DNA of 64,000 nt from Mytilus californianus (Eukaryota), in contig NW_026262734.1 of NCBI RefSeq assembly GCF_021869535.1, positions 33,604,001 through 33,668,000 on the forward strand, read 5' to 3'. The notes beneath the pieces were generated by a model. That model was not told where the DNA came from. It made no database searches and saw only the letters and a list, made by a program, of their open reading frames with translations. Position 1 is the first letter of the stretch, and each line of letters starts with the position of its first letter. This document shows, piece after piece, positions 23,924-64,000 of this stretch. Both the position numbers and the translations under genes were made by a program.

Positions 23924-26170
23924 CTACACCAAGTTTGTAAATGAATCAAGACTATTTTGAAACCGATGATATCTAATTCCATAACTCGGAGAAGAAAGTC
24001 CTAGCAAAGAATTTAATGTAGACCACATATCCTTTTTATAATTAGAAAAATCAATGCAAATACTAGCTCTCATAAAAGCTTTAATATACCTATAAGAAAC
24101 ATCATGATTATTTAGAAAATCATAATTTATAATAATAACATTTTTCAAAAAATCTTCTCGATAATTCACCCAGGCATATTTCCACTCACAAGAAATCCAA
24201 GCTTTTGTGCTTTCACGTGATAAATGATGTAGGTCGCTTAGAAGAACGAGAATAATTTTAGATTTCGATAGGATATCAATTACTTCTTCTTCACGTGGTC
24301 TACCAGGCTGGCAATCTCGATACGGTAGAAAAGATTTAAGTCCCCTATCGTTAAGATGCGGTAAAAGCTCATACGATATCCAATTTCGAAGTCCATCGTC
24401 GTCTTCATTGCAAGATATGTAAATATCATATTGAAAAGAGTTTCTAGAAACAGGCCTGCTAATTTTTCTCAAAAAGCGTCGCCATAGAATATAAATTTCA
24501 ACATAAAAATTATAGCCCGCAAAGGCAAAAATTACGACAAGGCTAACTATGATTCCAATACATAAGTTGAACCATTTCAGATGATAATCTTCTGTACATC
24601 CTAGCTCGCTTTTCGTGATTTGAGTTATAGATTTGTAACCGGTTTCGGTCCGACAGAATATCCATGTGTTATTATAGCAAGGCATTGTTGATGACGGTAG
24701 CCAACTCTGCAACCACAGATCTTTACATGTACAAACAATATCTAGTCTTCCTAACTGTACATTGCAAGGCCTGAAGTTTCCTATGGACCTATCAATACTT
24801 GTTAACGGATTGTGTTTTATATTGATGATCGTGGTACTTTTCAGCTGTGACACAAAAAATTCAGAAATACTATCGAAATTATTTTCTTCAAGATTGATTT
24901 CTTTTATTCGGAATGTGTAATTCTTTGCTCTTTCAAACTGGGTATCTAAATCAGAAAATAAATTCTTAGAAAAGTCTAAAACCAAATTCTCGTATTCTGG
25001 TAAAACTAACGGAAATTTTTTCGATGCTAAGTTCGAACGGCAATTGATAATAGTTTTGTTTTGACTTGGTTGATAAAAGCAACGACATTTTTGAGGACAT
25101 CTTGCAGACATTGAAATGTTGCAGATAAGTAAATCAGGTTGATTCAGAAAACCTCTTATCAGTTTATTTTTAAACTGTGAAGGGCTGTTACATTTCAAAT
25201 TGACATGACTTGCATGTAAAATTATCGCCCCAATAGTAACCTGCGAGACAAACGGATAAAATTTGCAATCGCATAACCAGTTGTTATGCCTGAAGTCGAA
25301 ACTGTAAAATACCAGTTTTCCAAATAATCTCAGGTCATTAAAACCGATTTTTTCAAAATTGAAAAAATGAGTAAAATTGTTGTATGTGAAATCAAGATAT
25401 CCCCCACGGCCGAAATTTAATTCTGGTTGAAATGAAAAGTTTGCGGGATTTGTAATTTCGTTCAGAGCATTATGAGAAAAATTTACAATGCAGAAATATT
25501 TTTGTCTTGTCCAAACTATGTTTGTGACGTCGATTTCTGTCATATTGTTATACGATATATCAAAATTAAACATACTACCCGCCATATGTAAGAAAAACTT
25601 CGGCTCCAATTTGGTGATTTGGTTGAAGGATACATCAACTCTACGGAGATGTTTCATTCCATTGAATATGTCCGCAATCAAAGATTGTATTTTGTTTCCT
25701 GCCAATAGTAATGTATCTAGTATAGACAAGCATGATATATTTCTGATATCTGTAATTTGGTTGAATGACAAGTCGATGTAAACAGTTGTATTAAAATTAC
25801 AAACTGAGAGCGGAATTGCAGTTAGATTTCCGTACGTGTAAATTAAGTAATTAAAATGAACATCATGGTCTATAGTTTTCAATTCAATATCGTGTTTAAC
25901 AAAAAAGACATTTAAATGTCCAACATTAGTAAAATTAAGTTTCCCATTCAAACTTCCGTCAACTGTCCATAATGGTTGAGCCTTACATGTACAGCATTCC
26001 AAACTGTTTTCAAATCTCATTTTGTTCAGGTAATCCTGAGCTTCGCATTCTTCAGGACAGAGTAAATCCGATCTATTGAACAATATGCCAAGTTGTTCTT
26101 CTAAAGATTCACTGGAAGAACCATTATTACACAATACCACCATCAAAAGCGCAAAACACAATTCTGACAT
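23924..26170 (-). CDS. TLR-C: intronless Toll-like receptor with canonical BB-loop proline
   Basis: 748-aa ORF with signal MSELCFALLMVVLC, LRRs, NNWLCDC...CPQKCRC, TM and TIR (YDIYISC, PYRDCQPG, WISCEW). Confidence 0.96.
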   Translation of the reverse strand: MSELCFALLMVVLCNNGSSSESLEEQLGILFNRSDLLCPEECEAQDYLNKMRFENSLECCTCKAQPLWTVDGSLNGKLNFTNVGHLNVFFVKHDIELKTIDHDVHFNYLIYTYGNLTAIPLSVCNFNTTVYIDLSFNQITDIRNISCLSILDTLLLAGNKIQSLIADIFNGMKHLRRVDVSFNQITKLEPKFFLHMAGSMFNFDISYNNMTEIDVTNIVWTRQKYFCIVNFSHNALNEITNPANFSFQPELNFGRGGYLDFTYNNFTHFFNFEKIGFNDLRLFGKLVFYSFDFRHNNWLCDCKFYPFVSQVTIGAIILHASHVNLKCNSPSQFKNKLIRGFLNQPDLLICNISMSARCPQKCRCFYQPSQNKTIINCRSNLASKKFPLVLPEYENLVLDFSKNLFSDLDTQFERAKNYTFRIKEINLEENNFDSISEFFVSQLKSTTIINIKHNPLTSIDRSIGNFRPCNVQLGRLDIVCTCKDLWLQSWLPSSTMPCYNNTWIFCRTETGYKSITQITKSELGCTEDYHLKWFNLCIGIIVSLVVIFAFAGYNFYVEIYILWRRFLRKISRPVSRNSFQYDIYISCNEDDDGLRNWISYELLPHLNDRGLKSFLPYRDCQPGRPREEEVIDILSKSKIILVLLSDLHHLSRESTKAWISCEWKYAWVNYREDFLKNVIIINYDFLNNHDVSYRYIKAFMRASICIDFSNYKKDMWSTLNSLLGLSSPSYGIRYHRFQNSLDSFTNLV

Positions 26171-27444
26171 TTCACAATAAATGAACGCTAACTAAATTTG
26201 TGATGTGAATTCTGTATGCAGTTAGTTGGCAGAAACTCAAAATTAATTCTTATTCCTTGTTTAAATCAAACACATATCTTATTGTTAACACAAAGAAACA
26301 TTTAAATGGTTCAAACAAATGTCTCTTTTTTTTTAAATGACAAGGTCTTTTCCTTTATCCAATTCGATAAGAATTGGTGATTCGGGTTTCAAGTTAGGAG
26401 CATAAATAATACACATTTTTGAATGTTTTCAAAGCATAAATGACACAGTGAAATAAAATCGATCAACTAAAGAGTTATGCTTGACCGAGTGTAACACAGA
26501 AGAAAAGAATGAATAAATTACTTTACTTTAAATCCACATTTGTACGCTCATTTGTCATATCTTCTTGTTTTATCATCGAAGTAAGATTGGAAAGGTTTAC
26601 ACACACATTACCCGTTTTCTCCGAGTCAAATTGTTTCCTCGTATACAAAAGAACTAAAATACATCATTAAACGTCTTTAAACAAAAATCACCAAGTATAA
26701 ACCACAGCAGTCATATATGTGTATTGCCTATCACTGCATTTGCTCGAAGTCAAATTGTGAGATCGATGAATAAAAGAAATTTAAACCTACCATTTAAAAC
26801 TCAAAACCTGAAGTCAAGTATGAATCAAAGCTATACATTTTTTTTTTATCAAGAATTTCTTTTGCCCGTAACTGTATTTGGACCAAATCAAATTCATGCA
26901 TCTGCTAATCATGCGATACATACACAACATTAAAAATCGGTTTAAAATTGGAAAACTTATACCAGTTATGTACCATCTCTACGAACTGTACGAATGTAAT
27001 GTATTTTATAGTGGGGAGCAGTTACGAAATGTGCAATATTGTTTTTTTTTTGTTTATCTCATTAGGAACTTTTTAATGGTCTATCTAAGCTTTTTCTATT
27101 ACCTAATACAAGGAACACTTGAAATCCTGATGTTAAACAGTCGAACACTGTCTATCAAATAAATTGACAAATAAAGGTCATTTTTGAAGTGTTCCGATTC
27201 TTACAGTTGTTCAAAATTCCGTTTTGAAAAGTTTTATTATATTCATTACAGCGTTAGGTTGATGCTACTCTAGAAATTAATTGAAACATTACCTTTTAAG
27301 TTTTAGTACGCAAAAAGGTTGCTAGTAAACCGGCGTAAAATTAACATGTACATGCGGTAGTTAGCTATATCTTGACCCTGTATAAATTGTCTTAGTTAAT
27401 AACAAGCGTGTTTCCATATTCTGATTCCTGCTATATATTATTTA

Positions 27445-30400: not shown

Positions 30401-30453
30401 CCAGAGTAAGTATCTCCAAACCAAATTGGTGCATCAACAGAATAGATATCTCC
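27445..30453. repeat. About 3-kb minisatellite with a 42-bp unit (ACAGAATGAGACTAGGTGCATCA + ACAGAATAAGTATCTCCAA)
   Basis: Dozens of consecutive units, best conserved at about 27700-29600 and decayed at both ends. A family-B insertion interrupts it at 30136-30280. Confidence 0.97.
30136..30280. mobile_element. Family B fragment inserted in the minisatellite
   Basis: Matches 43045-43195 with small deletions. The array resumes at about 30281. Confidence 0.8.
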
Positions 30454-31882: not shown

Positions 31883-33780
31883 TTATTTCAACAGCGCAAC
31901 GATATCTTCCTCAATGTTTTTGTTGACATTAGAGAAATTTATGTCTTTCCTCAAAGTGAAAATCCTCTTAGGAATGTTTGACAACATCATCATATGTAAG
32001 CAAATCGTAATTTATGATGATTAGTTCTCGACTAAAGTCCCACTTGTAATAATTCCATGCATAATTCCATTCACTTTTATTCCATTGTTGATTTCCTTTG
32101 GAATCGTCACTAAGAAGTATTATCAAATTTCGACTTTTGGAAATGACGTCAATCGTCTCTTGTTCCCGAGGTTTGCCGATTGTACTGTTCCTGAAAAATA
32201 GAAACGCATCGAAACCCCTTTTCTCCAGACAAGGAACTAAAGACGTTAACAACCATTTACGAATTAGTTCATCATCTTCATTGGAAGAAATATATATGTC
32301 GTGTATTACCGTGGATGGCGATAACGGATTCCTGAAGAAGTTTATTCAATTCTAGTTAATATAAATAACTCAAACCTAAGCTTGTATACAATCATTGCAC
32401 ATGTAATAACTGCAAAAAATGCAGCGCATATCGAACTGTTTACCAATGAAGTATTTATAACTGAGGCTGAACATCCAATATTTTCTTTTTCTATTTCAGT
32501 AATAGGAGGTAATAGTCCATTATTATTACATAAAACCTGTATGCTGTTCGCACAGTTTTAATATTGTAACGGTAACCATATTTTCAACCAAACATCTTTG
32601 CACGTACATTTCATAATAATTTGTCCCGATGAAATCTGACATTGCTTCAACATCTGTTAAGAACGTGGAATCCTTTTAATAGCATTGCCTCTCATATCTA
32701 CTAGTTGTAGTTTTCTAAACCTATAAAGAGCTAAATTTTAAAGTATTTCAATGTTGTTGTTTGAAAGATCAAGTTTTTGTATCCGTTCAAAATTATCTAA
32801 CTTAATCCGTTCAATTATTTTCAAATTTTTTAAACTATTATTTGAAAAATCAATTTCCAAATGTATATACGAAGTAAGAACTGAATAAAATCTTGTTAGT
32901 CTTTTCTCATTAGCAGGTTGATAAAAACAGTGGGATTTGGTGGACACCTTTCAGCTAAAGACAGGTGACATATTAATTGATCAAGCTCAGACGCAGCTAT
33001 GACGTCAAAAATTGTTTATTTTTTAGTTGGCGTGGCGAATCACAAAAAAAGTTTAACTGATGAAACAATGCAACAAAAATTTCAAGCGATTTGCAAACGG
33101 GTATACCTTAAGTTGCAAATCCAAGGATTTCTCCTTGCAAATATCGCCCAATAAATCAGTTTTCCTCCATGTTTAAGGTTAAGACCATTTTAATTAAACA
33201 TTGAAAAGTGTGTTAAGTTATTAAACGATGCATCCGGCACTCCGTGAATAGAAAACACGGAATTGTCTTGACTTTTTCCAATTCAAGTATGTTGTTAAAA
33301 TAATTTATGGAATTATGTGAACAATTTGCTTTACAAACTATGAGTTGTGTCCATAATATGTTTGTAATATCAAGGCTAGTAAGATAGTTGTGAGACACAT
33401 CAAATTTAAACAAACTTCCATTCACGTTAATTAAAAATCCAGGTTCGATATATTTCAGTCGGTTATGAGACAAGTCAATTACACGAATAAATTTCAAGTG
33501 AAGAAATGGTGTATTACTTAGGTATTCCACCAGGTTATGATTAAGTGTATCTAAGAATGTAATGCATGATACAAGATCAATGTCTGTAATTTTGTTGAAT
33601 GATTAATCTATTAGAACAATTTTCGGAAACTCACAAATATTACTCGGAAAACTACGTAAATCATTATCAAAGGTGTATATATGATAGTATGAACGATAAA
33701 CCGTCGAACTTTCTATCAGTATGCTGTTGTTACTAGTATCCATCTCAACAAATAACTATGTCATCTAGTTTCTCTATTTG
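31883..33780 (-). pseudogene. psiTLR-B1: near full-length pseudogene of TLR-B
   Basis: Aligns with TLR-B from DLRSFPSNICEFP to the homologous stop at 31883, and the 3' flank also aligns. Lesions include a TAA in LRR1, a deletion in the LRRNT, frameshifts at about 32950-33240 and a 1-nt deletion near 31965. The 5' end is not resolved. Confidence 0.92.
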
Positions 33781-36700
33781 AGTATATCTATTACTCCTTC
33801 ATCATGTACTTTCATCCGGAACTTAATAAGCAGACACTAGATGAAAGAGGAAGATATATATTAAATAGTTAGAATGTTCCTCCCCATCGTATCTTGATAA
33901 ATGAAAATTGAGAACATTTCCAGGAACCATTTTTAATATAATGATGGACAACTCTTTTTTTTTTTTATTACATACGAAAAGCGGTAAGGCTTTTTTACAA
34001 CATTTAATGTTGTGTGTAGTATTAATCATATGCTCGAGGTTATGATGACATAGTCCAAGATAAAGGGTTGTAATTATGGCTAAATCATTAGCACATATGT
34101 ATCAAATTTTAACTGAGCACCTCAAATTACACCCGGTTTTGTAGTCTGTTGTTTGCCTATTCGTCGTTTTAAGTTTTTATGCTGTTGTGTCGGTCCCTAT
34201 CCGAATAATGAGTTAAGTATGTTCTATCTCTTTTTAAGTCAAAACTTAGTTGAAAAGAAAATGAGAAAGATCGAATGAAATCATTTCTTAACAAGTTCTA
34301 CGATTTTTGATATATATGTTTATAGATTTGACATTACTACATGTATGTCGCATTTTCTCAGCTCATCGACATTGCCATAGACAAATCATGTCAGCTGTTA
34401 ATAATTTCGACAATGCAACCTGTTTTGTCATGTTTTAGGCCTTGACACTTATAACTTGAGGTAACTTTTCGAAAAAAAAATACGTTTTGAATGTTCGATG
34501 TAAAAACACAAAATTGAATATTCGAAACTTATCCGAAAATAACACAACTTTTAAGCGGGAGAGGCTATATTAGGTACAAAAAAGAACTGTCAAATATTAT
34601 TAAAATTGTTTAAAATTTTAATATAACTTGCACCGTATACTTAATGCAAAACCGTTGTGCAACTTTTCAAGTCGTCTCTAATACGTTATACAATGTCTGT
34701 TATAAATTGGAACTTAATAGGGATATGTACCGAGATTCTTTTTGTGATTTCCGTATCCTGTAAATTATTTACTTATCATTAATAAATAATCTTCAAGATA
34801 TGAAAGTTATTATCTTATTTTCCGGGAGAGTAAATATATGTTTGTATTAATTGCACCTTGATTTACACAGTATTCATTGATTGACTGCTAAATGCTACAC
34901 ATGGAATTACAGAAGTGAAATGGTCCGGAAGACAGAACCTAAATTTTGATGTGAACATACGTAGAAAGTCTTATGCAATTTGGTGATTCTAATGGTTGTC
35001 AGTACACACAGAAGATATGTTCAATTTGCTCTGGTACGAAGACTTATTTTTGTCTTCTGCAGTGTTTTTTTTTGCTTGTTATTTGGGCGTGTTGAACAGA
35101 CCTAGAGGCTTATCACCACGTGGAGGTCTATTTATTTTTCAAAGTCTGTTTTCGTGTGAAAAAAGTTTATATTTTGCGTTAAGTTATCTGTTTCAGGGTT
35201 ATTCCAACCAGTTTCATACTCAGTTGCAAAGAGAAAGCATTCTATGGTCAGACATCAATTGTCTCATTTTTTGACACAGATCTTCTTAAATACCAGGTTT
35301 GAAGGTTAACATATTGTATTTTAAAACTTGTTAATTGGCAAAAATTTTCTTTTGTAAATACGGAAATCATTGCTTTATTAACAGGAAGTCGGTTAACGCA
35401 TTGGTGGAAGTTGATGTATGAGTTACTCGAAGTTCATGTCAATTGTTCCGTTTGTTTTATGAACTGAAAGATATAGGTACAAACTGCCGGAAGTATATTG
35501 GTTCAATCCTGTTTGTTTTTATGGCCCAAAATATGTTGGTAATGCAACCAAAAGTGCCGAGTCAGTTTAATGCTTTGAAATAGATTAGATATGACATGAG
35601 CGAGAAATATTATTGAAATAAATGGCGAGATAATCAAAATTAAAATAATAAGAGAAATCACAAAAGTTTGATTTAAACATGATCAAAGAGTTTGAAGTTC
35701 AAATTACCGTATCGTCCTAGATCTTGACCTATATTTAAAGAATGTAATGTAGTGATTTTGATACATCTAAAGTTGATCTGTTTATGTTTTACTAACTAAC
35801 TTGTGATTGTTTATATTATGTTTCAATTTTAGTTTTTTATTGGCAATCATAGTTTCATTTGGGTTTGCATTTATTTGTATTCAATATCGTGTTGCAATAG
35901 TGATCAATTTTGTTTGAATTTGTTCGGTTTATTTACTTCGTGTAAAATACTATGATACTGGTGTGTTTGTTTCTATGGAAGTTTTTATGAAACAATATGA
36001 CAATCTTACGTGTGATTCTTTACTTGCTACAAAGTGAAATAGTAATATTTTTACTAAAACTTTATGTCCCTCTGCAGAAGGTTTTACAATCTAAAATATA
36101 GAGCATGTTCATTTTCCATCGAACTATTTTTAAATTAACGTAACTGATTGTATGTTCTTAGTGACATTTCTGCTTTGTTTTAGAAATATACTCCTAACCA
36201 ATTTGTCAGAGGTGAGGCATAAAAGAGTTTTTTCTGTTTACTTTGGAATATACATACAGTGTTTTTTTTTTAATTTCAAGTGACACAATTGAGCGCATGC
36301 GCCTGCTCTGACGGATGAACCAACATAAACATGGTTTAGAAACTAGCCCGATGATTAAGTGATTATCGGGTTCCATGGGATTTTTTTTGAGACACTTTAT
36401 AACATCATCTTGTTATAATTACTACTTGTATTTTAATACCAACCCGTACACTTTAATGTAACTATCTTTTACAAAAACTACCTAACCCTTTTATTTTCTC
36501 ATCTAAAGTAGTGGCCGCTGCTGTTTTTTATTTTAATTATGATATTGGTTTCGTCCCTTAAACAAATATCTACATCCAAAACATGTATATAAAGTTCATA
36601 ATCAGAACCACAAGAAAAAGATAGTGACCTTTGAATATAAGTTATATGCTTCAACAGCAAAACAATAGAAAGGGATCTTAAAAGACAGATTTACTCTTAA

Positions 36701-38398
36701 TAAAAGTCGCATTTGTATTATGTAATATGAAGCTAAAACTAAAGTCAGAATTTAAAAAAAATTACTATAACAATAGAAAATATAAGGTTGCTTTGCTTAA
36801 ATTGTAAAGTTTCGATAATGTGATCAATTAGTGAAAATAAAATACAAGGCCAAAGTTCTAAGTACATGTAACACGGCATACAGTCAAACACTTACATTAT
36901 CGTATAAAAAGTTAGGTCCATATTTACAAAAAAAAAATGTCAAAAGCGTTCACTAGTTGACCAATTCTGATCTAAACAGCGTTTAAAAGACTAAACAACA
37001 CACTGTCAATTTCAGACATATGAACTGTGGTAAAATGAGCACTATTCAGACATTTCTCCTCTACTCATTTAAGATATATCCTTTCGATGTTCAGACAGCT
37101 CATTAGTTGCGATTTACCTGTACATATCAACATCGAACTGAATGGTCTTAATGCTGCTGATTTATCTGCACGCGAATTGTCCGTACTGAACTTACCGTAG
37201 TGGATATTTTGACTTAAGGGCTGCCCATGACTGAATGGTTTATTGTTCAGACTTTGTATTCTGTCGTTATTGTGGCACGACATAAATGGTGGCGGTAGCC
37301 AACTCTGAAGCCATATATATCCACATTTACAAACAATATTAAGTCTTCCTAACTGGTCATTACAAGGCCTTTAGTTTTAAAGTTACCTATCAATTCTTTT
37401 AATCGATATGTAATTTAAATCAATTAATTTTGGTATTTTTTTTAGATGAGATACAACAAATTCAAAAATATGATCAATATCATTTTTTGGCAAGATTTAT
37501 TTTCTTTTCTTCGCAATATCTAACTTTATGCTCTTTTAAACCTGTCATCTAAATCAACAATGAATCTTTTTTAAAACATATATAGCCAAATTTTCATATA
37601 CTAGCGGAAATGTTTAGATACCTATTTCGAAAAAAAATATTATGGTTGTGTTTTTACTTGATTGATAAAAGCAATGACTCTTTGGTGGACACCGATATGT
37701 TTCAAATCAACAAATCCGGATGGTGCCTGAAATCTGTTATTACTCTGTTGTTATATTGTGGTGGTTCACTACATTTTAAGTAAATATGTTTTGGATGTTG
37801 TGTTATTATCCAAATATATTCCTGCGTGACAAATGGATAAAGTTTGCAATCGCAAGTGAAGTTGTTTTGCCGGAACTCGAAACTCTAAGATACGAGTTTT
37901 CCATATAATCCACTGTCACTAAACAATATGTTTAAAAAAAAAAAGGGCTTCAATTGTTTTATCTAAAGTCGAGATATCCCTCTTGACCAAAATTTAATTC
38001 TGATCGAAAAGAACAGTTTTCTGAAAAGATTTGTAATTTTGTTCAGATTATTATGAGAAAAATTAACAGTGCAGAAGTAATCTTGTTTCGTCCATATAAG
38101 GGTTAGTGACGTCGACTTCTGTCAATGTATTATACAATAAAGTGAAATAAACTTTCCGCCATATTCAAGAATAACTTTGACCATAATTTGTTGATTTGAC
38201 TGAAGGAAACATCAACTTCTCGGAGGTATTTCATCCCATGACTGGATGTTCTTGCCTTCCAATATCAATGTATCTAGTAAAGGCAAACATGAAAGATTTC
38301 TTATATCTGTAATTCGACAGAATGAAAAATCAATGTAACAGTTATATTAAAATCGCAGACTGAAATCGGAATGGCTGTTAGATTTCCGTAGGTATAAA

Positions 38399-38553
38399 AA
38401 ATGAAAACAACACGTGATAAATTTTATGCATCCGAAGCCCTTATTTGGATTTACCTTCATCAAGAACGCTCAAAGCCGAATATTTGAAAGCCAATGATGT
38501 ACAAGAACCGAAGCAGCTGAAGGGCTATATTACCAAGAAGGCCCCTAAAAATA
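38399..38553 (-). mobile_element. Retrozyme fragment with a degenerate hammerhead (38427-38472)
   Basis: Minus strand reads GAGCGTTC-TTGATGA-AGGTAAATCCA-AATA-AGGGCTTC-GGATGC. It is the same family as 40140-40260 and 42744-42791. Confidence 0.65.
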
Positions 38554-38681
38554 ATAAGTTAATTGGTAGATAAACAGTACGATCCATAGTTATCAATTTA
38601 ACATAATTTTCACAAAACAAGACGTCAAGAAATCCAACATCATTTACATGATTTCTATCATTCAAACTTCTTTTAACAATC

Positions 38682-39124
38682 ACCCCAAAGGGTGACTGGG
38701 GAATAGAAATATGGTCACTACAGGTCTTCTTCCGACCGGCAGTAAGACCCTTGCCAAAGTTGGGCGTCCGTTTGGATGTGCGGGATGTATAAGTACGCAG
38801 CCACGTCTGGTCAGAATGGGGACGATAAATCCGATGTCTCGTGTAGAGAGAATGCAACGCACTCTGCACGTTAAAAACCCTTGCAATAACTCTTTGAGGG
38901 TCCGTAGGTGGCCTGTTGCAAGGCCAAATTTCTGTCCCTATCTAATTTACCCTCAAGGTACATTGGCAGTCAGAACTTCCCCGACCTTATCCCGGAAGGC
39001 GTCAATTAAAATACCTACTTATTGTATTCATTGTTAATTTGTTCTCGTCCTGAACATGCATTAAAATTTTTGCCACTGGACGTTAAGCAACCAACAATGA
39101 ATGAATGAATCAATCAATCAATCG
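38682..39124 (+). mobile_element. 5'-truncated mollusc-type SINE with a (GAAT/CAAT)n tail and a 10-bp TSD
   Basis: TSD TTTAACAATC at 38672-38681 and 39125-39134. The tail is GCCACTGGACGTTAAGCAACCAAC(AATG)n(AATC)n. The central GGGACGATAAATCCGATGTCTCGTGT...GCACGTTAAAAACCC resembles the Meta-type SINE central domain (from recall, unverified). Confidence 0.85.
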
Positions 39125-39874
39125 TTTAACAATCCAAGATGGTTGTACTCTACATGTACAGCATTTCAATTTATCATCAACTGTCATTTTTGTAGAAACG
39201 GCCTTGGTTTCATATTCTTTAAGACAGCGTAAATCTGATCTATTGATCAATTTTCCAAGTTTTAGAACTAGATACTCTTTAGAAGATATAGCACTGCAAT
39301 ATAATATGAGAATCAAAAGCGCAAAATACAATTCTGATAGCATTTTCAATTAATGAACGCACACTGTACTATTTGGTGTATTTGTTCAACAATTAACAGA
39401 AACATAATTGAAATTATATGTTTAAAATGGAGTTTGTACAATGTGAATCAGATATCTTTTGTAGTTATTATAATGTATATAATCGTGTTTACGGTTCCAA
39501 GTTATATCCAGATAACATTGCACGTTGATCACTTGTTAAAATAATTTGAATCAAACAAATCGGTCCACAAAGAAAAAGTGTTGTATTACTGAATAAAAAT
39601 AAAGAAATTTATGATAACTAATGGAATATGTTATGAGCAGATTTGTTTTCCTTATGAAATCGTTAGTTTGAGAAGATGAAAAAGATTCATGACTTTTGAA
39701 CAGCAATATCCTGCTGTTGCCTTTATATAGTAACGTTATGCATTTCATCCAAACCAAGTTTTTATATCATAGATAAAAGTGATACATACTATTGAAAATG
39801 CAAAACCTGAACATAAACGTAGGAATCACAGCCGAAATGTTCTTTTCATTAAGAATTATCATTATCAATAAATA

Positions 39875-42235: not shown

Positions 42236-42474
42236 CGTTTTTGAAGAATGTTATAACAAAACTTGTAGCCTAAAATTATTCTGACCGTATATTGGTTTTT
42301 ATGTTGAAAAATAAAACAAAATATAAAAATATTTAAATATACCAAAATATTATCTTACAACGTAAATATAGTGCACAACGATGTGATTCCTCACTAAAAA
42401 TTTACACGGATAACAAATTGATTTAGCAGCTTTTTTTGTATGCGATTATTTTATATACCTTACAACAACTTTCT

Positions 42475-42570
42475 GTAAATACAAACAACAGTAATATACA
42501 GCTGTTCAAAAATCATAAATCGATTGACAGAAAACAAATCCGGGTTACAAACTAAAACCGCGGGAAACAC
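42475..42570 (-). mobile_element. 3'-terminal fragment of the PLE-2 family
   Basis: Reverse complement of 60790-60877. Confidence 0.8.
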
Positions 42571-49167: not shown

Positions 49168-51111
49168 ATGACCATTCATCTTTCTACTTTTCCTTATAGT
49201 GCAAGGGTTGTCGTATAATTATGTCGAAGATGACATGGACACATTGTTTAACAGAACTGATTTGACATGCCCTTTAACATGTAATAATTGAAGGTTTACA
49301 TGTCATCAGATGTCTTGTTGTTTTTGTAATTCCAAATCAAATATTGAAAACCTGACAAATTTATCAATTTTTATACAAAGAAGGTCAGTATAATTCTTCA
49401 ATTGTGAATCCTGGAGGTAAACATGAACATGAACGTAAACACATTTTAGCAAATGACTTTCATTCGTATTATAGATTTATCATTTAATAAAATCAATTTA
49501 ATGGATCCTGCATTTCTCTTAAACATGAATGGAAGTTTATTTTATCTGCGCTTAGCCTTCAACAATATGTCAACTCTGGATGTCACTAATGGATTGGCAT
49601 CTAAACAGCTGTGTTTTTGTAGGGAAGATTACTCCCACAATGCAATAAAATCAATTGCAAATGAACTATCATGGAAATTTAGAACCAATACCTCCCTAGG
49701 AAACGGAGGAATGGTGGATGCGTCAAATAATTCACTTTCATTGTTTGTGTATGCCAAAACGTTGCGTTTCCTCGGTTTTGAAAGCCCTCTATTTATCGGA
49801 AGATTTTTTTCTAATGGATTTGACGGTAGAGATAATAAATGGAATTGTGATTGTAATATTTATCCATTTGCAATTGCAGCAGAACGACTTGCGCATATAA
49901 TGACACGGGATTATTTCGACGCCTAAATGCCGCTGTATAAATTAACCAGCTATTAGAAATAGGACTGTGATTGAGTGTTCTGCGTCGAATCTTACAATGT
50001 TTTCAAGCGTACTCCCTGATTACAAAGTGTTAGAGGTTGATTGATTAAATAACTACTTACAAAATCTGCAAATTCATTTCAGACATGACTATTACTATGA
50101 CCGTATACGTTTATCAAATGTTTCAAACAACAAAATTCATGTATCACATTTGTTTCGTTTAAGGAAAGCGGAAATAGATTTAAGAGGAAACAATATTTAT
50201 TCATTACGCATATCTATTGGAGAACTTAACCCTTGCAACATTTATCTGGACACTATAATAATGCAATGCACATGTCAAGATATTTGGTTACAACAATGAC
50301 TTCCGCAGAATGATTCAAAATGTAGAAAAATATATAAGTGTTGTGCCGGATTCATGGACAATTAATTTCCATATATATTATGACAAAGAAAGACCTTGGG
50401 TGTAGAATACCAGATACAAATTTCCTATGGATAAGTACAATAATCGTCGATGCGTTCTTTATTGTCGTTTTACTTTCGGTAATACTATGTTTCTTTCGAT
50501 TCGAGATATTCATAATTGGTCGAAAATTCATAAAATATTTTAGGGAGACTACTTATCCTTTGTCATTTTGTTACGACTTATATATTGCGTGCAATGAAAA
50601 AGATGTAAAGATTCGTCTGTGGCTGATATCGAATTTACCTCCAAATCTAGAAGAGCATAAAATGCTTAAGTTGTTTTGGCCCTGAACAGATAGTGAACCA
50701 GGAATAGTCCGGGAAGAGGAAATAATACAAGTGATGTCACGTACTCGAACCTTTATCATCTTTTTGAGTAAAGAATACCACGGACAAATTCGTTGGAATA
50801 AAAAAGAATGGAAACATGCCTGGCACAATTATACACATGATCTGAACAGGGAAATAATCATTGTTAATTACGACCTTCTGGAGGCTAATGCAATTGCAAA
50901 GCGATATTTGGGAGCCTCTCTACGAATAGGACACTTTATTGATTTTTCTAATCATAAGAAGTCGATAGAGGACGAAATAACCATCTTACTAACTAAACAA
51001 AATAATAATTTGAAAAAAAGAAAAAACTATACTCTTTCTGAAAAAGATAATGACAAATCACCATTTTTGAAGCCGTATCCTTTATATTCTGATTTTAAGT
51101 TACGATCTTAG
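49168..51111 (+). pseudogene. psiTLR-A1: full-span pseudogene of TLR-A
   Basis: Homologous from AAGGATG (49168) to the stop at 51111. Premature TGAs at 49289, 50297 and 50683. Deletions correspond to TLR-A about 1930-2120 and about 2600-2715. Confidence 0.93.
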
Positions 51112-57819: not shown

Positions 57820-58044
57820 GTCATAACAAGAAAGCATTAAAACGTTTTAATTCATTATATTCCACCAATTCTTTTGGCATGAAAAGAACGGTAACTCGTC
57901 AGTAACAAAGACTTATCTTATTTCATCAATGTTAGAATATCTTCTTCAATTCTATTATCAAAATTCGAGAAGTTAATTACCTTTCTTAAAGTAAAAAACC
58001 CTCGAAAGAACTTCTTTACAGCATCATCGCATGTAACAACTACT

Positions 58045-60877
58045 TCCAAAAATGAGGAAATGTAGAATTCGCCAATAAAGGTTTAGATGCTATCAATATT
58101 AGCAATATTTTCCACCAGAATTCTGTACAAAAAACTTTACCTGATTACTTCAAAAATAAAGGTACACCTGCAATTTCATATACTTACACCAAGTCTATTG
58201 CATCCAAGATTTTCAACCATAAGAGGGTTTTAGAGGCCTTTAACCTCAAAGCTGTGAAATCTAAACCTCCGGATTGCTCATGTGCATCGTCAAAATACAA
58301 TTATAGTCCAGTTCGTCATGTTAATACTGGCGACCTTGGCATCGTTACCAATGAACAACTAAGAGAGTTGTTAGCCAAGGGACCAAAATACAGAATCCCC
58401 CAGCCCATCAACTGGAACAAGAACTTCAGGTTACTAGTGAATGCAGTTGAGGACTATGCTAGAAAATGGATAAAGCGCGAACCAGACGAACCAGAACAGG
58501 ACACTTCGTCTGAATGGATCAAAGCTATTAGATCATGTATTCAGAAGCGCATTCAGAAACTACGATGTCCTATGAGCACAAGGGTTTCTAACCCATTCAA
58601 GAATCCGGAGGTTGTGGATGCTTTATCCTCTTTGCATGACAAATATGTCGTTGTTCCAGCAGATAAAGCCTCCAATAATATTGTCTTCGTATGTAAAAAC
58701 CATTATTTGCAATGTCTCACAAAAGAGCTTGGAATAAACAGCACAACTGGTAATCCTACATATTCGTTAACATCATTTACAAAGGATGAAATTTTACAAA
58801 ATCACAAATCTGTCCTTCTTTCATTTGGTATTAACATCAAAGAAAACAAAGAAAATCAACCGTCATTATGCTGGATACCAAAACTTCACAAAACTCCGTA
58901 TAAAGAACGATACATAGCTGGATCATCAAGATGTTCGACTAACCATCTTTCTTAAGTGTTGACTACTATTCTTTCTACAATAAAAAATGGCTTTCAAAAA
59001 TATTATGATGAGATATATTCAACCAGTGGTGTCAATCAGATGTGGATTCTCAAAAATTCTAAAGATCTTTTGCTAAATCTTAGATCACAATCTCTGCAAT
59101 TTTGCAGCAACATTAACTTTTGATTTTTCTACGCTTTACACTACTATTCCCCATGCTCAATTAAAAGATCGCCTTCACCATCTCATTAAACAGAGCTTTT
59201 TCTATAAAAATGGGAATCGTATATATAAATTTCTTGTTTTGGGTTATAATAATTCAAATTTTGTGAAGAACCACACTGATTCTATCAGGAAATACAGTGA
59301 AGATGATATTATCAAAATGCTGGACTTTTTAATCGACAATATATTTGTTGAGTTTGGAGGATTGATATTTCAACAGACAGTCGGTATTCCAATGGGTACT
59401 AATTGTGCACCCCTTCTGGCCGACTTGTGTTTATACTCGTATGAAGCAGAATTCATTCAGAACCTTCTAAAAGACAAAACGAAAAAGCACCTTGCAAAAT
59501 TCTATAATTTTACTTTCAGATATATTGATGATGTCCTATCACTGAATAACCCATATTTCAGTCAGTACTTGCATCTCATATATCCCAGTGAACTTGAAAT
59601 TAAGGATACTACTGATACAATAAGGACTGCTTCATACCTTGATCTTTTCCTCAATATTGACACAGATGGATGACTTCACACTAAAATCTATGACAAACGG
59701 GATGATTTCAACTTCCAAATTATCAATTTTCCCATTTCTCAGCAGTAACAATCCCTCTGCTCCGTCGTATGTTGTTAACATGTCTCAATTGATACGTTAT
59801 GCTCGTGCATGTTCACACTATACTGACTTCATATACAGGAGTGTGCTCCTTACGCAGCAAATGCTCCAACAGAGTTATGAGGAAGAAAGATTAAAAATGA
59901 CACTCCGTAAATTTTATGGACACCATCACGAATTGGTTGATCTATACGATGTGTCTAAACTATATAATGACATTTTTAACCACGTCTTAGATTGTGGTTT
60001 AACATCTATGTTGTCTGTCTGTTTAGTACCAAACGTGACCTATTCCCGAATATGACTGTTATACCGAGTGTGAATTTGCATTGCTATACGACGTGTCTCG
60101 GTATTTTGTACATCCAACATTCATGTACTTATTTTTGATGTGTCTGTTATGGTTTCGGTTGAATAATGTGTTATGTCCTATCGTTTGTTGTCCAAATAAT
60201 TATAAAATTGCCTTTCAATACATCATTGTCATATTTCCGAATATGACTGTTATACCGAGTGTGAATTTGCCTTACTATACGACGTGTCTCGGTATAATTA
60301 AATAAATAATTATTAAAGTGCCTTTCAATACCATCATTGTCATGAAAACTGTTTGGACGAGTATTGTGAAAATAATTGTATAAAGTTCGAGATTGCATGT
60401 TAGTTACGTAAGCGCGTCACTGTTTTTGATATCCTGTGGAGTTAATGGAATATGTTCGTTGTTGTTCTGCGGTTTGCATGTTGTGTCGACTATTACATTA
60501 TTTGTTTGTACGTTTCTCTGTGATGAATGTTCTTACGTGTGTTTGTGCTGTATTTCTGTCACGTAGTATTGTCATTTTAGCGAAATTTTTTAACATTGTC
60601 ATAAAGCGGGAGGTTTGGCTAGCTATTAAACCAGGTTCAACCCACCATTTTGTCTTAAAATGTCCTGTACCAAGTCAGGAATATGGCAGTTGTTATCAAA
60701 TAGTTCGTTTCTATGTATGTTGGTGTTTGTTTTTGTTTCACTTCAGTGTTCCTGTTGTTCATTTGTTTACATCTTATAGTTGATGTGTTTCTCTCGGTTT
60801 TAGTTTGTAACCCGGATTTGTTTTCTCTTAATCGATTTAAGACTTTTGAACACCGGTATACTACTGTTGCCTTTATT
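58045..60877 (+). mobile_element. PLE-2: 5'-truncated Penelope-like retroelement (Naiad-type CxC linker plus RT) with a long 3' tail
   Basis: FANKGLDAINIS, KSKPPDCSC, WIPKLHKTPYKERYIAGS, GIPMGTNCAPLLADL, FRYIDDVL and RKFYGHHHELVD. Stops at 58953 and 59671 and a frameshift near 59110. It ends GTATACTACTGTTGCCTTTATT. Confidence 0.88.
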
Positions 60878-62010
60878 TTACAAAAACGTAATTGATGACA
60901 ATAAGGTTCCGACTGATGTCCCATTTCCGGACTAGTGGATCATCCTCATGTGCAGAAATATATATGTCTTGTATCATACAATTTGGCGCTACTGGCTTCT
61001 TTACGTAGTTGAAAAAAAGATCTTGTTAATATAAAAAAATCAGAACTAAGCTTAAATATAATCGATGCAATCGTGATCACTGCAACAAATGCTGATCATA
61101 TCGAAATGAATCACAACGAAGCATTGTTATTTGTCTTGGAACAGACAAGATCTACTTTTTTTCTATTTCAGTAATAGAACGTAGTATTCTATTGTGTTCG
61201 CATAAAACCTGTGTGTTTTTAGCACAGCTTTGGTATTGTAACGGTAACCATATCTTCAACCAAAGATCCTCGCATTTACATTATATAATAATTTGTCCTA
61301 AAGCAATCAGGCATGGCTTCAGCATCTGTAATGACCTTAATAAAGCACTAGATCTGAAATGATTATAATTTGGATATCTGAAAGATCACGTTTCTTTATT
61401 CTTTCAAAAAATTTCAACCCAAACTGTTCTACCCTTTTTAAATATTTTATGTTATTGTTTGTGAAATCTATTTGAAGATGTTCATACAAGGGCAGAGCCA
61501 GAACAATCAACCACTGTTCTATTGTCTTAAGCTGGCTGATAATAACAGTTGCATTCTGGTGGACATCGTTCAGCTAATGACAAGTTACAAATTAATTGAT
61601 CCAGCTCGGAATTATCTATTAGGTTTTTCAATGTTTTCATATTCAGTTGTGTTGGAGAATCACAAACCATTAAAATATTTATGTAGTCAAAAATATTAAC
61701 TACCATTTCAGATGGTTTTGCAATTGGATAAATTTTACAGTTGCAATATTTCAATGATTTCCCTCCAAATACATAACCCAGAAATATAATTTTCCTTCAT
61801 GTTTAACGTTTATACCATTTTAAGTAAAAATCGGAAATCATGTTAAATTATTATACGATACATCAAGCGATCCGTACAAAGAGAACACGAAACTCTCATG
61901 ACTTTTCCATTCTAGGTTGTTTGTAATATAGTTTATAGAGTTATGAGAAAAATTTGCAGTACAACATGTTATCTGTGTCCACAATGTGTTTGTAATATCA
62001 CGGGTAGTAA

Positions 62011-62035
62011 ATAAAGGCAACAGTAGTATATTACC
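62011..62035 (-). mobile_element. 25-bp insertion of the PLE-2 family 3' terminus with a 7-bp TSD
   Basis: GTAGTAA[ATAAAGGCAACAGTAGTATATTACC]GTAGTAA. The insert core is the reverse complement of 60857-60875. The paralogous empty site reads GGCTAGTAAGATAG at 33373. Confidence 0.85.
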
Positions 62036-64000
62036 GTAGTAAGATGATTGTAAAAAACATCAAAGTAAAAAAAATGTCCATTCACGTTATTCAAACATCC
62101 AGACTCGATATATTTCAGTCGGTTATGAGACAGGTCAATTTCCACTAGGTTATGATGTAGTATTAATGTATCAAGTATTTCAAGACATGATAAAAGATCG
62201 ATACCTTTAATTTCATTGTATTGTAAATATACCCGACCAATGTACGGATAATCACAAATATTACTAGGTAAACTATGCAAACTATGATTAGGGCTGAATA
62301 TGATATATCCCGGAGACAACATCGAAGTATGATTCAGTATGCTTTTGTTATCAGGCTTTTTTATTACGATTAAGAGATCATAATCTTCTAACTCGTGATA
62401 GGCAAAGCTAATACAACACTGTGTGTGACTACAAGATGAGTGACATCGTAAATCATCACGTCGAAATTTGACTTGTAAAACTTCTGGTAAAATTAGTCAT
62501 GTACCATTTGAGGGCTTCTTCAAACTTAAATGAAGGAATTCTTGATATAGATGTTGTGTGAATTTATCCAATTTCGGATCTTGATCTAAAGATTCACTTG
62601 AAGATCTAGTAATATAACATAATATTACAACAAAAAGCGCAAAGCACAATTCTGACAACATTTCTTAATAGGAGAGCGTTAACTACTTTTGTGTTGTGTA
62701 TACGGTATGCAGTCAACTGACAGAATATCAAAACTATATCGGATTCATTACTCAAATATCTATTTCATTGTAAAAACAAGAAAAATAACAGCGAATCACA
62801 CAGAAGATTTAAATGTTAAACCATCTTTTGAATTTTTAATAACAATACGAATTATCCGGGTTTCATGTAATACGCATTCACAAATAAAATCATTATAGAT
62901 ACTAGTATACATATTATGTATGCTATAGGCGCATAGTTTATTATCAACTTATTCAAAAGATTTATGACTTTCAAAGTAAATCAAAATCGATCAACTTAAA
63001 AGTTGTGGATCACCTAAATAAAACATAAACAAAGGAATAATTAATTATCCTCTATTACTAAATTTGCTCTTTTATTTGATTTTTCTTTAGTTTTTTTCTT
63101 TGTTTTCTTTTCTGAAATTGTAGACAACATGCTTCTCCGCAAACTATCTTAACAATTATAATATTTGAACAGTAATTAAAAAATGAGAAATGCTGCTCAC
63201 TTCTAATATGTACGCATTCATATATTAGGTTATTTAAACGAAAAAAGATATTCATATAAAACCATACATTCAGAATCGTGTTTATAAACAATATATAAAA
63301 CATAGAAAAGTCATAAAAACAAATATCGATAAGTATAAAAAAAACCCAGCAGTAATGATTATTTACTGTCTATAACTGCATTTTCACCAAACCAAATTGT
63401 TACATCATACATAAATGTATTAAAAGCACACGATTTAAAACTCAAATATGACGACGAATCGTCAGGTTTTAACCACAGCTGTAGTATATTTTCTTTTAGA
63501 ATTACTTTTGCCCGTTACAAAACCCGACAAAAAATTATTTGTACCACACCTGTCATATATTTTCTGTGACGCAGGAGATTTATAAAGTAGTATTTTCTTT
63601 TTTCATCCAAACTGATTTAGAATTCGTCAGTGTTTATCTTACAATTCTTTTATCTTCTATAAAAAGGCGTTTTGCTGTTACCGAAATAACATAAGTTGAT
63701 AATTTTCTAGAAATTTACTGAAACAAACGTTTTTACTTCTAGAGCGCAAAAAGAGCGTAAAATGTAGATGCAGTTATTTTTTTTTATCATGCCGCGATAT
63801 AAGTGGTCTCGGTAAACAACAGGTTTGTTATGATATAAAGCTTCTAACTATATCGACATAGAACCTACTGTTCATTCCTTAATGCACCTATTTACAAAAA
63901 TACATTAATGTAACGACGAAAATATTCAAATATGCATGGTCTTACGAGTATTGCTTACTTATTGATACCAGATACTAGTAGGTAAGAAAACTTTATGTAA

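What the first reader, a model, noticed from the sequence alone, without database searches (positions are those of the whole stretch)
62400..63040. Chimeric TLR: TLR-C promoter and signal peptide fused in frame to a TLR-B ectodomain
Seen: about 350 bp upstream aligns with TLR-C upstream DNA (e.g. GTATGCAGT...CAGAA at 62706 vs 26214, AAAATCGATCAACT.AA.AGTT at 62982 vs 26455). The leader MLSELCFAL...SSSESL matches C, and from about 62586 the frame continues DQDPKLD...LQVKFRRDDLRC, matching B, with only GA microhomology at the junction. On the minus strand C lies upstream of B, so one deletion in a duplicated B-C cassette would produce exactly this. Inference: a promoter/leader-capture route that gives a receptor a new expression pattern. 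The in-frame junction suggests it may once have been functional.
Basis: partly seen in the sequence, partly recalled or inferred. Interest (0 to 1): 0.7.

Follow-up and report, generated by a model that had tools for sequence, protein, structure and literature searches.

The report
Old chimeric mussel TLR, now dead
In a mussel (Mytilus californianus) Toll-like-receptor cluster, one decayed gene copy really is an old fusion of one paralogue's promoter and signal peptide to another paralogue's receptor body; a related mussel keeps the same fusion as an intact reading frame, so it is a clear but ordinary case of gene fusion in a tandem immune-gene array.

Summary
On the minus strand, 60921-62586 aligns with TLR-B (66% nt). 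The leader (62587-62661) and about 1.2 kb upstream (to 63853) align collinearly with TLR-C's leader and upstream DNA (leader 84%, upstream about 65%). The switch lies on a GA at 62586/62585 and is in frame: codon 24 of both parents, codon 26 of the fusion.

The two parts have discordant histories. The body sits in the B clade (100/100), about 1.4 substitutions/site from C. The 5' part is only 0.49 from C and shows no similarity to B's leader. Other B-clade genes in four Mytilus species carry a different leader, so the C-type leader on a B body is derived.

It is not a mis-assembly. Contigs from independent runs bridge the junction, and the M. coruscus assembly has the identical junction in an intact 735-codon ORF with LRR, LRRNT and TIR domains (dN/dS 0.28-0.36).

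The window copy is dead: 8 premature stops, 7 frameshifting indels, LRR and TIR deletions and a 2.85-kb insertion.

The cassette order C→B recurs at least four times, which favours a deletion or unequal exchange inside one cassette. A new expression pattern remains untested.

This is a new member of a known kind, of modest interest.

The parts
62662..63853 (-). C-type upstream region (putative captured promoter and 5' UTR), collinear with 26171-27436 upstream of TLR-C
   Evidence: One search gives three collinear HSPs at 63-68% identity. One search gives 65.5% over 1131 positions (z=9.4). Only C, C' and C-like copies match, so it is not a dispersed repeat.
62690..62727 (-). Best-conserved block of the C-type upstream region (TTCTGYCA..ACTGCATAC..), 30-65 nt before the ATG. 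Sense RNA coverage ends about here.
   Evidence: Alignment (chimera, M. coruscus L001, C, C-like L003). RNA depth falls to 1.5 in 62668-62771 and is 0-0.27 in every bin beyond. That it is a promoter or transcription start is inferred.
62587..62661 (-). C-type (X-type) leader, codons 1-25: MLSELCFALFVVILCYITRSSSESL
   Evidence: It is 84% nt identical to the C leader and 73% to the C' leader, with no similarity to the B leader.
62585..62586 (-). Junction: the GA shared by both parents, at the first two bases of codon 26 (GAT, Asp). In C the codon is GAA (codon 24); in B it is GAT (codon 24).
   Evidence: M. coruscus L001 has the identical junction SSSESL|DQD.
60921..62586 (-). B-clade body (mature N-terminus DQDPKLD.., LRR ectodomain, internal LRRCT/LRRNT, transmembrane segment, start of TIR), heavily degraded
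   Evidence: Against the M. coruscus ORF it has stops at 62499, 61840, 61822, 61753, 61529, 61283, 61113 and 61098. Frameshifting indels lie at 62043-62010 (+32), 61750 (+2), 61499 (-26), 61340 (-55), 61165 (+2) and 61019 (+1). In-frame deletions are 6 nt (62338) and 45 nt (62144).
60877..60926 (-). Short TIR remnant lying after a 213-nt (71-codon) deletion of the TIR core
   Evidence: 94% to L001 11954-12003.
58032..60876 (.). About 2.85-kb insertion splitting the TIR end. It carries reverse-transcriptase-like ORF fragments on the + strand (59239-60055).
   Evidence: The RVT_1 match is weak (E=0.001, below the Pfam cut-off). The flanks 60800-60886 are repeated elsewhere in the window.
57918..58031 (-). 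C-terminal end of the TIR domain and the original stop codon (..FFRGFFTLRKVINFSNFDNRIEEDILTLMK*)
   Evidence: 84% to L001 12005-12208.
23924..27436 (-). Comparator: intact TLR-C (23924-26170) and its upstream region. This is the donor type of the 5' part.
11817..14015 (-). Comparator: intact TLR-B. This is the donor type of the body. It lies downstream of C on the same strand.
31886..39343 (-). Second, decayed C'-B' cassette. C' is 37119-39343 and has an MLSELYF.. leader. B' is 31886-33773 and lacks its 5' end.
49190..51108 (+). T1' pseudogene, tail-to-tail with the chimera exactly as T1 (1655-3938) is with B

Best explanation
The window is a Toll-like-receptor array on a Mytilus californianus chromosome. 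The array is built from repeated cassettes in which a C-type TLR lies upstream of a B-type TLR on the same strand.

In one old copy of that cassette, a deletion (or an equivalent unequal exchange) joined two points. One was the end of the C-type signal-peptide coding region. The other was the first codon of the B-type mature protein. Only 2 bp of shared sequence lie at the join. Everything between was removed, which corresponds to about 12 kb in the present C-B cassette.

The product was an in-frame gene. It has the C-type upstream region and leader, followed by a B-type ectodomain, transmembrane segment and TIR domain.

This fusion gene lived as a real gene for a long time. It has diverged into at least two copies, and one copy in M. 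coruscus is still an intact ORF under purifying selection. The copy in this window has since died through stops, frameshifts, LRR and TIR deletions and a retroelement-like insertion. It probably still gives a low level of sense transcript that starts inside the captured C-type region.

Shown: the chimeric structure, the junction, the discordant ancestry, the intact relative and the decay.

Inferred: deletion as the mechanism, use of the captured promoter, and any change in expression.
For: 1. Sharp switch of homology at 62586/62585, with about 1.2 kb of collinear C-type upstream DNA.
2. The body tree puts the chimera in the B clade (100/100). It is about 1.4 substitutions/site from C and 0.39 from B. 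The 5' tree and distances put the chimera 0.49 from C. Non-coding DNA cannot stay three times closer than the coding body unless the 5' part has a younger common ancestor with C.
3. Polarity. The two other B subclades share a different leader (B against P0010, z=5.4). So do B-clade proteins of M. coruscus, M. trossulus and M. galloprovincialis, all followed by the same DQYPK.. mature start.
4. The same junction sits in M. coruscus L001:9911-12118. That ORF is 735 codons with no internal stop, and LRR_8, LRRNT and TIR score above the Pfam cut-offs. dN/dS is 0.36 against the M. edulis copy and 0.28 against B, but 0.66 against the window copy.
5. Cassette context. C→B is present at 26170→11817, C'→B' at 39343→31886, and again in M. 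coruscus L006. A C-like gene behind the same 42-bp satellite is in L003. The chimera is followed by T1' as B is by T1. The M. edulis copy is followed by DNA homologous to the B-T1 spacer.
6. Independent DNA. Contigs of coded organisms B and C span 62148-62726 (5 differences) and 62479-62720 (6 differences).
7. Stranded RNA reads lie only on the sense orientation from 60900 to about 62770 and are absent upstream. Some reads differ from the window at only 1-2 positions.
Against: - A long gene-conversion tract would give the same picture within the window. The window ends 147 bp beyond the last C-type match, so the far 5' boundary cannot be seen.
- In M. coruscus the C-type upstream homology is kept for only about 220 bp before other sequence begins.
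- The M. coruscus locus is not a strict orthologue. dS is 0.26 against 0.065 for B orthologues, and flanks are 67-86% identical against 92-94%. The age and copy history of the fusion are therefore only roughly known.
- The M. edulis copy lacks its 5' end, so the fusion cannot be dated beyond the californianus/coruscus lineage.
- Over half of the RNA reads laid at 85% likeness are cross-mapped from B and P0010-type paralogues. Transcription of this exact copy, and reads crossing the junction, are therefore suggestive only.
- No signal-peptide predictor was available.
Confidence: 0.78

Rival explanations
1. Gene conversion or ectopic recombination. A B-type gene at its own locus had its promoter-proximal region and leader overwritten by a tract at least 1.3 kb long, copied from a neighbouring C-type gene. 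Nothing in between was lost.
For: The chimeric structure and discordant distances are equally expected under this model. Tandem TLR paralogues are known to exchange sequence by conversion (TLR1/TLR6, PMC2077338).
Against: The parents were already very divergent (body path about 1.4). Only 2 bp of identity lie at the 3' end of the tract, which is atypical for homology-driven conversion. No B-type upstream homology is seen anywhere in the 1.3 kb available. The position in the array matches a collapsed C-B cassette.
Confidence: 0.15
2. Ancestral arrangement. The B clade originally had the C-type leader and upstream region, this pseudogene preserves it, and B and B'/P0010 acquired a new 5' end later.
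For: In the body tree the chimera-type lineage is one arm of an unresolved three-way split in the B clade. On tree shape alone it could be the earliest branch.
Against: Non-coding 5' DNA is 0.49 from C while the bodies are about 1.4 apart. The 5' sequence nests close to C and C-like copies, and C' is further away. The model needs two replacements instead of one event. The B-type leader is shared by both other B subclades and by four species.
Confidence: 0.04
3. Artefact. Either a mis-assembly joined a C-type and a B-type read, or the upstream match is a shared transposable element.
For: The region is repeat-rich and multi-copy. Logan contigs at 85-95% likeness show that related copies exist.
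Against: Both halves are about 34% diverged from the C and B genes in the window, so they cannot come from them by mis-joining. Independent contigs and an independent species assembly carry the same junction. The upstream sequence is found only next to C-type leaders.
Confidence: 0.02

Closest known systems
Lepore-type fusion genes, and promoter-swap chimeras from unequal exchange between tandem paralogues (haemoglobin Lepore; the CYP11B1/CYP11B2 chimera of glucocorticoid-remediable aldosteronism). Cited from general knowledge, not tested here.
   Same: The 5' regulatory region and first coding part of the upstream paralogue are joined in frame to the rest of the downstream paralogue, with loss of what lay between. 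The result is one gene with the other gene's control region.
   Different: Those cases arise by homologous unequal crossing-over between very similar paralogues. Here the parents were already highly divergent and the join has only 2 bp of identity. That points to an illegitimate, end-joining-type deletion kept because it happened to be in frame at the signal-peptide boundary.
Gene conversion between tandem vertebrate TLR1 and TLR6 (PMC2077338)
   Same: Sequence exchange between neighbouring TLR paralogues produces genes with mosaic ancestry.
   Different: That exchange homogenises internal coding segments between close paralogues. Here a whole 5' end (upstream region plus leader) is replaced, with a single sharp breakpoint.
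Expanded bivalve TLR repertoire generated by tandem duplication (Saco et al. 2023, PMC10279657)
   Same: Same organism group and the same intronless TLR genes with an internal cysteine cluster, arranged in arrays. B, C and the M. coruscus fusion show LRR and TIR domains; B and the fusion also show an internal LRRNT.
   Different: That survey does not mention chimeras, recombination, gene conversion or pseudogenes (0 occurrences of each term). The fusion described here adds a further way in which such arrays diversify.

Membership tests
Toll-like receptor (LRR ectodomain, transmembrane segment, TIR) | Extracellular leucine-rich repeats | tested here: met
   LRR_8 scores above the Pfam cut-off in the M. 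coruscus chimeric ORF, in B and in C. The window copy aligns to them through the LRR region but lacks 15 codons of one repeat and is frameshifted.
Toll-like receptor (LRR ectodomain, transmembrane segment, TIR) | Cytoplasmic TIR domain | tested here: not met
   Window copy: 213 nt of the TIR core are deleted and the remainder is split by a 2.85-kb insertion. The intact M. coruscus relative does have TIR (37.1 bits against a cut-off of 21.3). The window copy is therefore a TLR pseudogene, not a receptor.
Toll-like receptor (LRR ectodomain, transmembrane segment, TIR) | N-terminal signal peptide and a single transmembrane helix | not testable with these tools
   By inspection only. The leader has a 13-residue hydrophobic core (LCFALFVVILCYI) followed by SSSESL, and there is a hydrophobic stretch SAFVAVITIASIIF before the TIR. 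No predictor was available.
Fusion gene by deletion or unequal exchange between tandem paralogues | The 5' part and the 3' part have different closest relatives, with one sharp breakpoint | tested here: met
Fusion gene by deletion or unequal exchange between tandem paralogues | The donor of the 5' part lies upstream of the donor of the 3' part, on the same strand, in sister copies of the array | tested here: met
   C→B and C'→B' in the window, and C-like→B-like in M. coruscus L006.
Fusion gene by deletion or unequal exchange between tandem paralogues | Outer flanks collinear with the outer flanks of an unfused cassette on both sides | tested here: inconclusive
   5' side: collinear with C upstream as far as the position where C's satellite begins, but the window ends there. 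3' side: a T1-type gene follows tail-to-tail as after B. The M. edulis copy is followed by DNA homologous to the B-T1 spacer. The intergenic DNA in the window itself is mostly turned over.
Gene-conversion tract | Recipient-type homology resumes on both sides of the tract | tested here: inconclusive
   The 3' boundary is seen at 62585/6. No 5' boundary is seen in the 1.3 kb available.
Processed (retro-)pseudogene | Homology limited to the transcribed region, poly-A tail, no promoter homology | tested here: not met
   Homology to C extends about 1.1 kb beyond where sense RNA coverage stops. The copy also sits in a syntenic array position.

The most novel reading that the evidence does not exclude
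The fusion may be a living, long-lived TLR lineage in Mytilus rather than just a dead relic. On this reading a B-type pathogen-recognition ectodomain is expressed under C-type regulatory control and a C-type signal peptide. It would be functional in M. coruscus. In M. californianus it would be a dispensable or polymorphic gene, with some haplotypes carrying fewer lesions: contigs of another organism label, and 6 of 9 RNA reads, lack the 2-nt frameshift at about 61156-61165. That would make it a natural experiment on how regulatory rewiring contributes to diversification of invertebrate immune receptors.
Probability: 0.4. Interest if true: 0.45.

Novelty: new member of a known kind. Interest (0 to 1): 0.3.

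Why it matters
Bivalves hold the largest TLR repertoires known, and their growth is usually described as plain tandem duplication followed by divergence. This locus gives a clean, breakpoint-resolved example of a second route. An illegitimate deletion inside a two-gene cassette put one paralogue's ectodomain behind another paralogue's promoter region and signal peptide. The product was kept under purifying selection long enough to duplicate and to survive intact in a sister species.

It offers a testable case of regulatory capture in an invertebrate innate-immune family, by comparing expression of the M. coruscus fusion with its C-type and B-type relatives. It also shows how gene models in these arrays go wrong: an internal Met is chosen as the start, an intact ORF is spliced, and neighbouring genes are merged.

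The mechanism itself is textbook, and the window copy is a pseudogene.

Tried and rejected
- Mis-assembly: rejected. Both halves are about 34% diverged from the window's C and B, independent contigs bridge the junction, and another species' assembly has the same junction.
- Shared transposable element upstream: rejected. The upstream sequence matches only C, C' and C-like copies.
- Ancestral retention of the C-type 5' end: rejected on distances.
- My own impression that B's leader resembles T1's (INMFWGFIL against INIFWTTFIL): not significant at DNA level (z=1.3). I do not use it. Polarity rests on B against P0010 (z=5.4) and on the leaders of other species' B-clade proteins.
- RNA coverage as proof of expression: weakened. 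The loose ends of partly laid reads match B exactly or P0010 closely, so much of the depth at 85% likeness is cross-mapping. Only reads with 1-2 differences, and the depth over the leader and junction bins, speak for this locus.
- M. coruscus L001 as strict orthologue: rejected (dS 0.26 against 0.065; flanks 67-86% against 92-94%; different distance and orientation relative to B). It is a paralogous or very deeply diverged copy of the same fusion.
- M. edulis L004 to date the fusion: uninformative, because its 5' end is replaced by unrelated DNA upstream of the equivalent of 62382.
These queries could not be made.
- The representative-library search was not used. B-clade proteins are more than 50% identical, so they would collapse into one representative.
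- I did not walk the M. coruscus contig to the true orthologous position. It needs at least three hops with an uncertain outcome.

Full report
**What the window is.** GC content is about 31%. The window carries four long intronless ORFs of 730-765 codons plus several decayed copies.

The gene lies at 33.63 Mb of JAKFGE010000008.1.
- The ORF at 11817-14015 (TLR-B) is 93-95% identical to a M. coruscus protein.
- Read along the minus strand, the layout is: chimera (62661→57918), T1' pseudogene (on +), T4 (on +), C' pseudogene (39343→37119), B' pseudogene (33773→31886), a 42-bp satellite (30.4→27.4 kb), C (26170→23924), B (14015→11817), T1 (on +).

**The observation.**

- Sensitive blastn of 60800-64000 against the window shows 60921-62586 aligned with B (66.1% over 1807 columns) and with B' (66.3%).
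- From 62585 onward there are three collinear matches to the leader and upstream DNA of C. These are 62585-63094 to 26100-26571 (62.8%, E=5e-34), 63280-63518 to 26641-26872 (67.6%) and 63692-63853 to 27255-27436 (62.8%).
- A semi-global alignment of the two upstream regions gives 65.5% identity over 1131 positions (z=9.4). B and T4 upstream give nothing.
- The 75-nt leader is 84% identical to C's (z=10-17), 73% to C's decayed twin C', and unrelated to B's (z about -1).
- The multiple alignment places the switch on a GA at 62586-62585. Before it the sequence follows C (..AGTGAATCTTTA). After it the sequence follows B (GATCAA.ATC.GAAATT.GAT).
- The join falls on the first two bases of a codon. 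It is codon 24 in both parents and directly follows the leader, so the fusion is in frame: ..SSSESL|DQDPKLD...
The C-type homology is about 1.2 kb rather than 350 bp. The frame is interrupted by a TGA 29 codons after the junction.

**Two histories in one gene.**

- A maximum-likelihood tree of the bodies puts the chimera inside a B clade with 100/100 support. It is 0.39 substitutions/site from B and about 1.4 from C.
- For the leader plus 240 nt upstream the chimera is 0.49 from C and groups with C-type sequences. B, T1 and T4 5' regions cannot be aligned at all.
- Mostly non-coding DNA cannot remain three times closer than the coding body under a single history. The 5' end therefore shares a younger ancestor with C-type genes than the body does.

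**Polarity.**

- The B clade has three well-supported arms: B with its M. coruscus orthologue, B' with an intact M. californianus gene 0.5 Mb away (P0010), and the chimera type.
- The first two arms share a different leader (B against P0010, z=5.4, 1 of 500 shuffles).
- B-clade proteins of M. coruscus, M. trossulus and M. galloprovincialis carry that leader too, followed by the same mature start DQYPK(L/I)DNLP.
- The C-type leader on a B body is therefore the derived state.

**Not an artefact.**

- Both halves are about a third diverged from the window's own C and B, so a mis-join of those genes is impossible.
- Logan contigs from other runs bridge the junction. One from coded organism B spans 62148-62726 with 5 differences. 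One from coded organism C spans 62479-62720 with 6 differences. An independent organism-A study covers the junction bins at depth 15-19.
- An independent assembly of M. coruscus has the same junction.

**An intact relative.**

- The protein search with B residues 131-330 returned a 705-residue M. coruscus protein (P0012) whose N-terminus matches the chimera's post-junction sequence.
- Its locus (L001) shows that the annotated start is an internal Met. The ORF continues upstream in frame to MFSELYFVLLFIILCCITKSSSESL|DQDRKMVKLTQ.., giving 735 codons without a stop.
- Pfam finds LRR_8, an internal LRRNT and TIR above the curated cut-offs, the same architecture as B.
- Nei-Gojobori estimates give dN/dS 0.36 against the M. 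edulis member of the lineage and 0.28 against B. Against the window copy the value is 0.66, as expected if the window copy has been drifting.
- The fusion was therefore a working gene and probably still is in M. coruscus.
- L001 is not a strict orthologue of the window copy. dS is 0.26 against 0.065 for the B orthologues. The flanks are collinear with the window (chimera, T1', T4) but only 67-86% identical, against 92-94% around B. The locus lies 218 kb from B in the opposite orientation. The fused gene has thus itself been duplicated, or is carried on very old haplotypes.
- A M. edulis copy (P0013, L004) belongs to the same lineage (87.5% to L001, tree 100/100). Its 5' end is replaced by other DNA, so it says nothing about the leader.

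**State of the window copy** (measured against the M. coruscus ORF).

- Premature stops at 62499, 61840, 61822, 61753, 61529, 61283, 61113 and 61098.
- Frameshifting indels: +32 nt at 62043-62010, +2 at 61750, -26 at 61499, -55 at 61340, +2 at 61165 and +1 at 61019.
- In-frame losses of 6 nt (62338) and 45 nt (62144, part of one LRR).
- A 213-nt deletion of the TIR core at 60927.
- An insertion of about 2.85 kb (58032-60876) with reverse-transcriptase-like fragments (weak RVT_1) before the last 37 codons (58031-57918).
- Some lesions are not universal. Contigs of organism C lack the +2 insertions near 61746 and 61156 and the 32-nt insertion. Six of nine RNA reads lack the one near 61156.

**Transcription.**

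- In a stranded organism-A RNA run (about 6% of it was read), reads lie only in the orientation expected for a minus-strand transcript. Depth is 1.5-21 from 60900 to about 62770 and 0-0.27 in every bin upstream.
- Caution is needed. 99 of 162 reads fit only partly, and their overhangs match B exactly or P0010 closely, so much of the depth is cross-mapping from expressed paralogues.
- Reads with only 1-2 differences from the window cannot come from paralogues. Depth of 9-12 over the leader and junction bins is also hard to explain that way, because there B is about 61% identical and C matches only 69 nt. This suggests low-level transcription starting inside the captured C-type region, near a block conserved between chimera-type and C-type genes (62690-62727).
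- Individual junction-crossing RNA reads could not be inspected.

**Mechanism.**

- The order 'C upstream of B, same strand' recurs. It is seen as C-B and C'-B' in the window and as a further C-like/B-like pair behind the same satellite in M. coruscus (L006). A C-like gene behind the satellite is also present in M. californianus L003.
- The chimera occupies the place of such a pair. C-type DNA lies upstream, as far as the position where C's satellite starts. A T1-type gene lies tail-to-tail downstream, as after B. The M. edulis copy is followed by DNA homologous to the B-T1 spacer.
- One deletion from the end of the C-type leader to the first mature codon of the B-type gene explains all of this. 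The interval is 12.2 kb in the present C-B pair and about 5.5 kb in C'-B'.
- With 2 bp of identity between parents that were already very divergent, the event looks like illegitimate joining rather than homologous unequal crossing-over.
- That the join is in frame exactly at the leader/mature boundary is most simply explained by survival of a product that worked.
- A long conversion tract cannot be excluded, because the window ends 147 bp beyond the last C-type match.

**Comparison with what is known.**

- Fusion of tandem paralogues that places one gene under the other's control region is a classic mechanism (Lepore-type fusions and the CYP11B1/B2 chimera; from general knowledge).
- Mosaic TLRs through conversion are documented for TLR1/TLR6 (PMC2077338).
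- The large survey of bivalve TLRs does not mention chimeras, recombination, conversion or pseudogenes (PMC10279657).
- I therefore rate this a new member of a known kind. It is well resolved and useful for annotation and for a regulatory-capture test, but not surprising to a specialist.

**Limits.**

- Reads could be laid only once.
- No signal-peptide predictor was available.
- The identities of coded organisms B and C are unknown.

Noticed in passing
window 1655-3938 (+): The T1 leader ATG (1655, MKINIFWTTFILQFF..) is out of frame by one base with the 746-codon body ORF, which starts at 1698. The shift lies next to a T6 run. T1 in this assembly therefore lacks an in-frame signal peptide. 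It is either a very recent pseudogene or a homopolymer assembly error. The M. edulis T1-like gene is called as an intact 760-aa gene.
   Followed up: partly
window 27400-30450; also L003:16195-20078 and L006:8396-9150: A 42-bp satellite (about 70 copies, with 84- and 126-bp higher-order periods) lies directly upstream of C-type TLR genes in M. californianus (two loci) and in M. coruscus. The 301-codon 'ORF' at 27708-28613 is just this repeat. The chimera's C-type upstream homology stops at the equivalent of the satellite boundary.
   Followed up: partly
window 23924-26170 (-); proteins P0002, P0012, P0004: There are gene-model problems in public annotations. The NCBI M. californianus model for C (537 aa) splices 211 codons out of an uninterrupted 748-codon ORF. 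The M. coruscus P0012 model starts at an internal Met and loses the signal peptide. The M. coruscus P0004 model (a 14.4-kb 'gene') merges a C-like gene with the TIR of the next B-like gene, making an annotation-level C-B fusion that is probably not real.
   Followed up: partly
window 31886-33953 (-) and L003:10001-12184: The B' pseudogene lacks about 500 bp, covering its leader and first 90 codons, although weak B-type upstream homology resumes at 33828-33953. Its intact counterpart (P0010, 727 aa, 88% nt) sits about 0.5 Mb away, in a segmental duplicate of the T1'-T4-B'-satellite-C block that lacks C'.
   Followed up: partly
L001, L003, L006 against the window: The array consists of large segmental duplicates 11-25% diverged from one another, both within M. 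californianus and in M. coruscus. True orthologous DNA around B is 92-94% identical between the two species. Orthology calls for individual TLRs in this region need flank comparison, not best hits.
   Followed up: partly
window 58032-60876: The insertion inside the chimera's TIR end carries reverse-transcriptase-like ORF fragments on the opposite strand (59239-60055; the RVT_1 match is below the Pfam cut-off). Its edge at 60800-60886 is repeated at 42470-42555 and 39684-39726. The element family was not identified.
   Followed up: no
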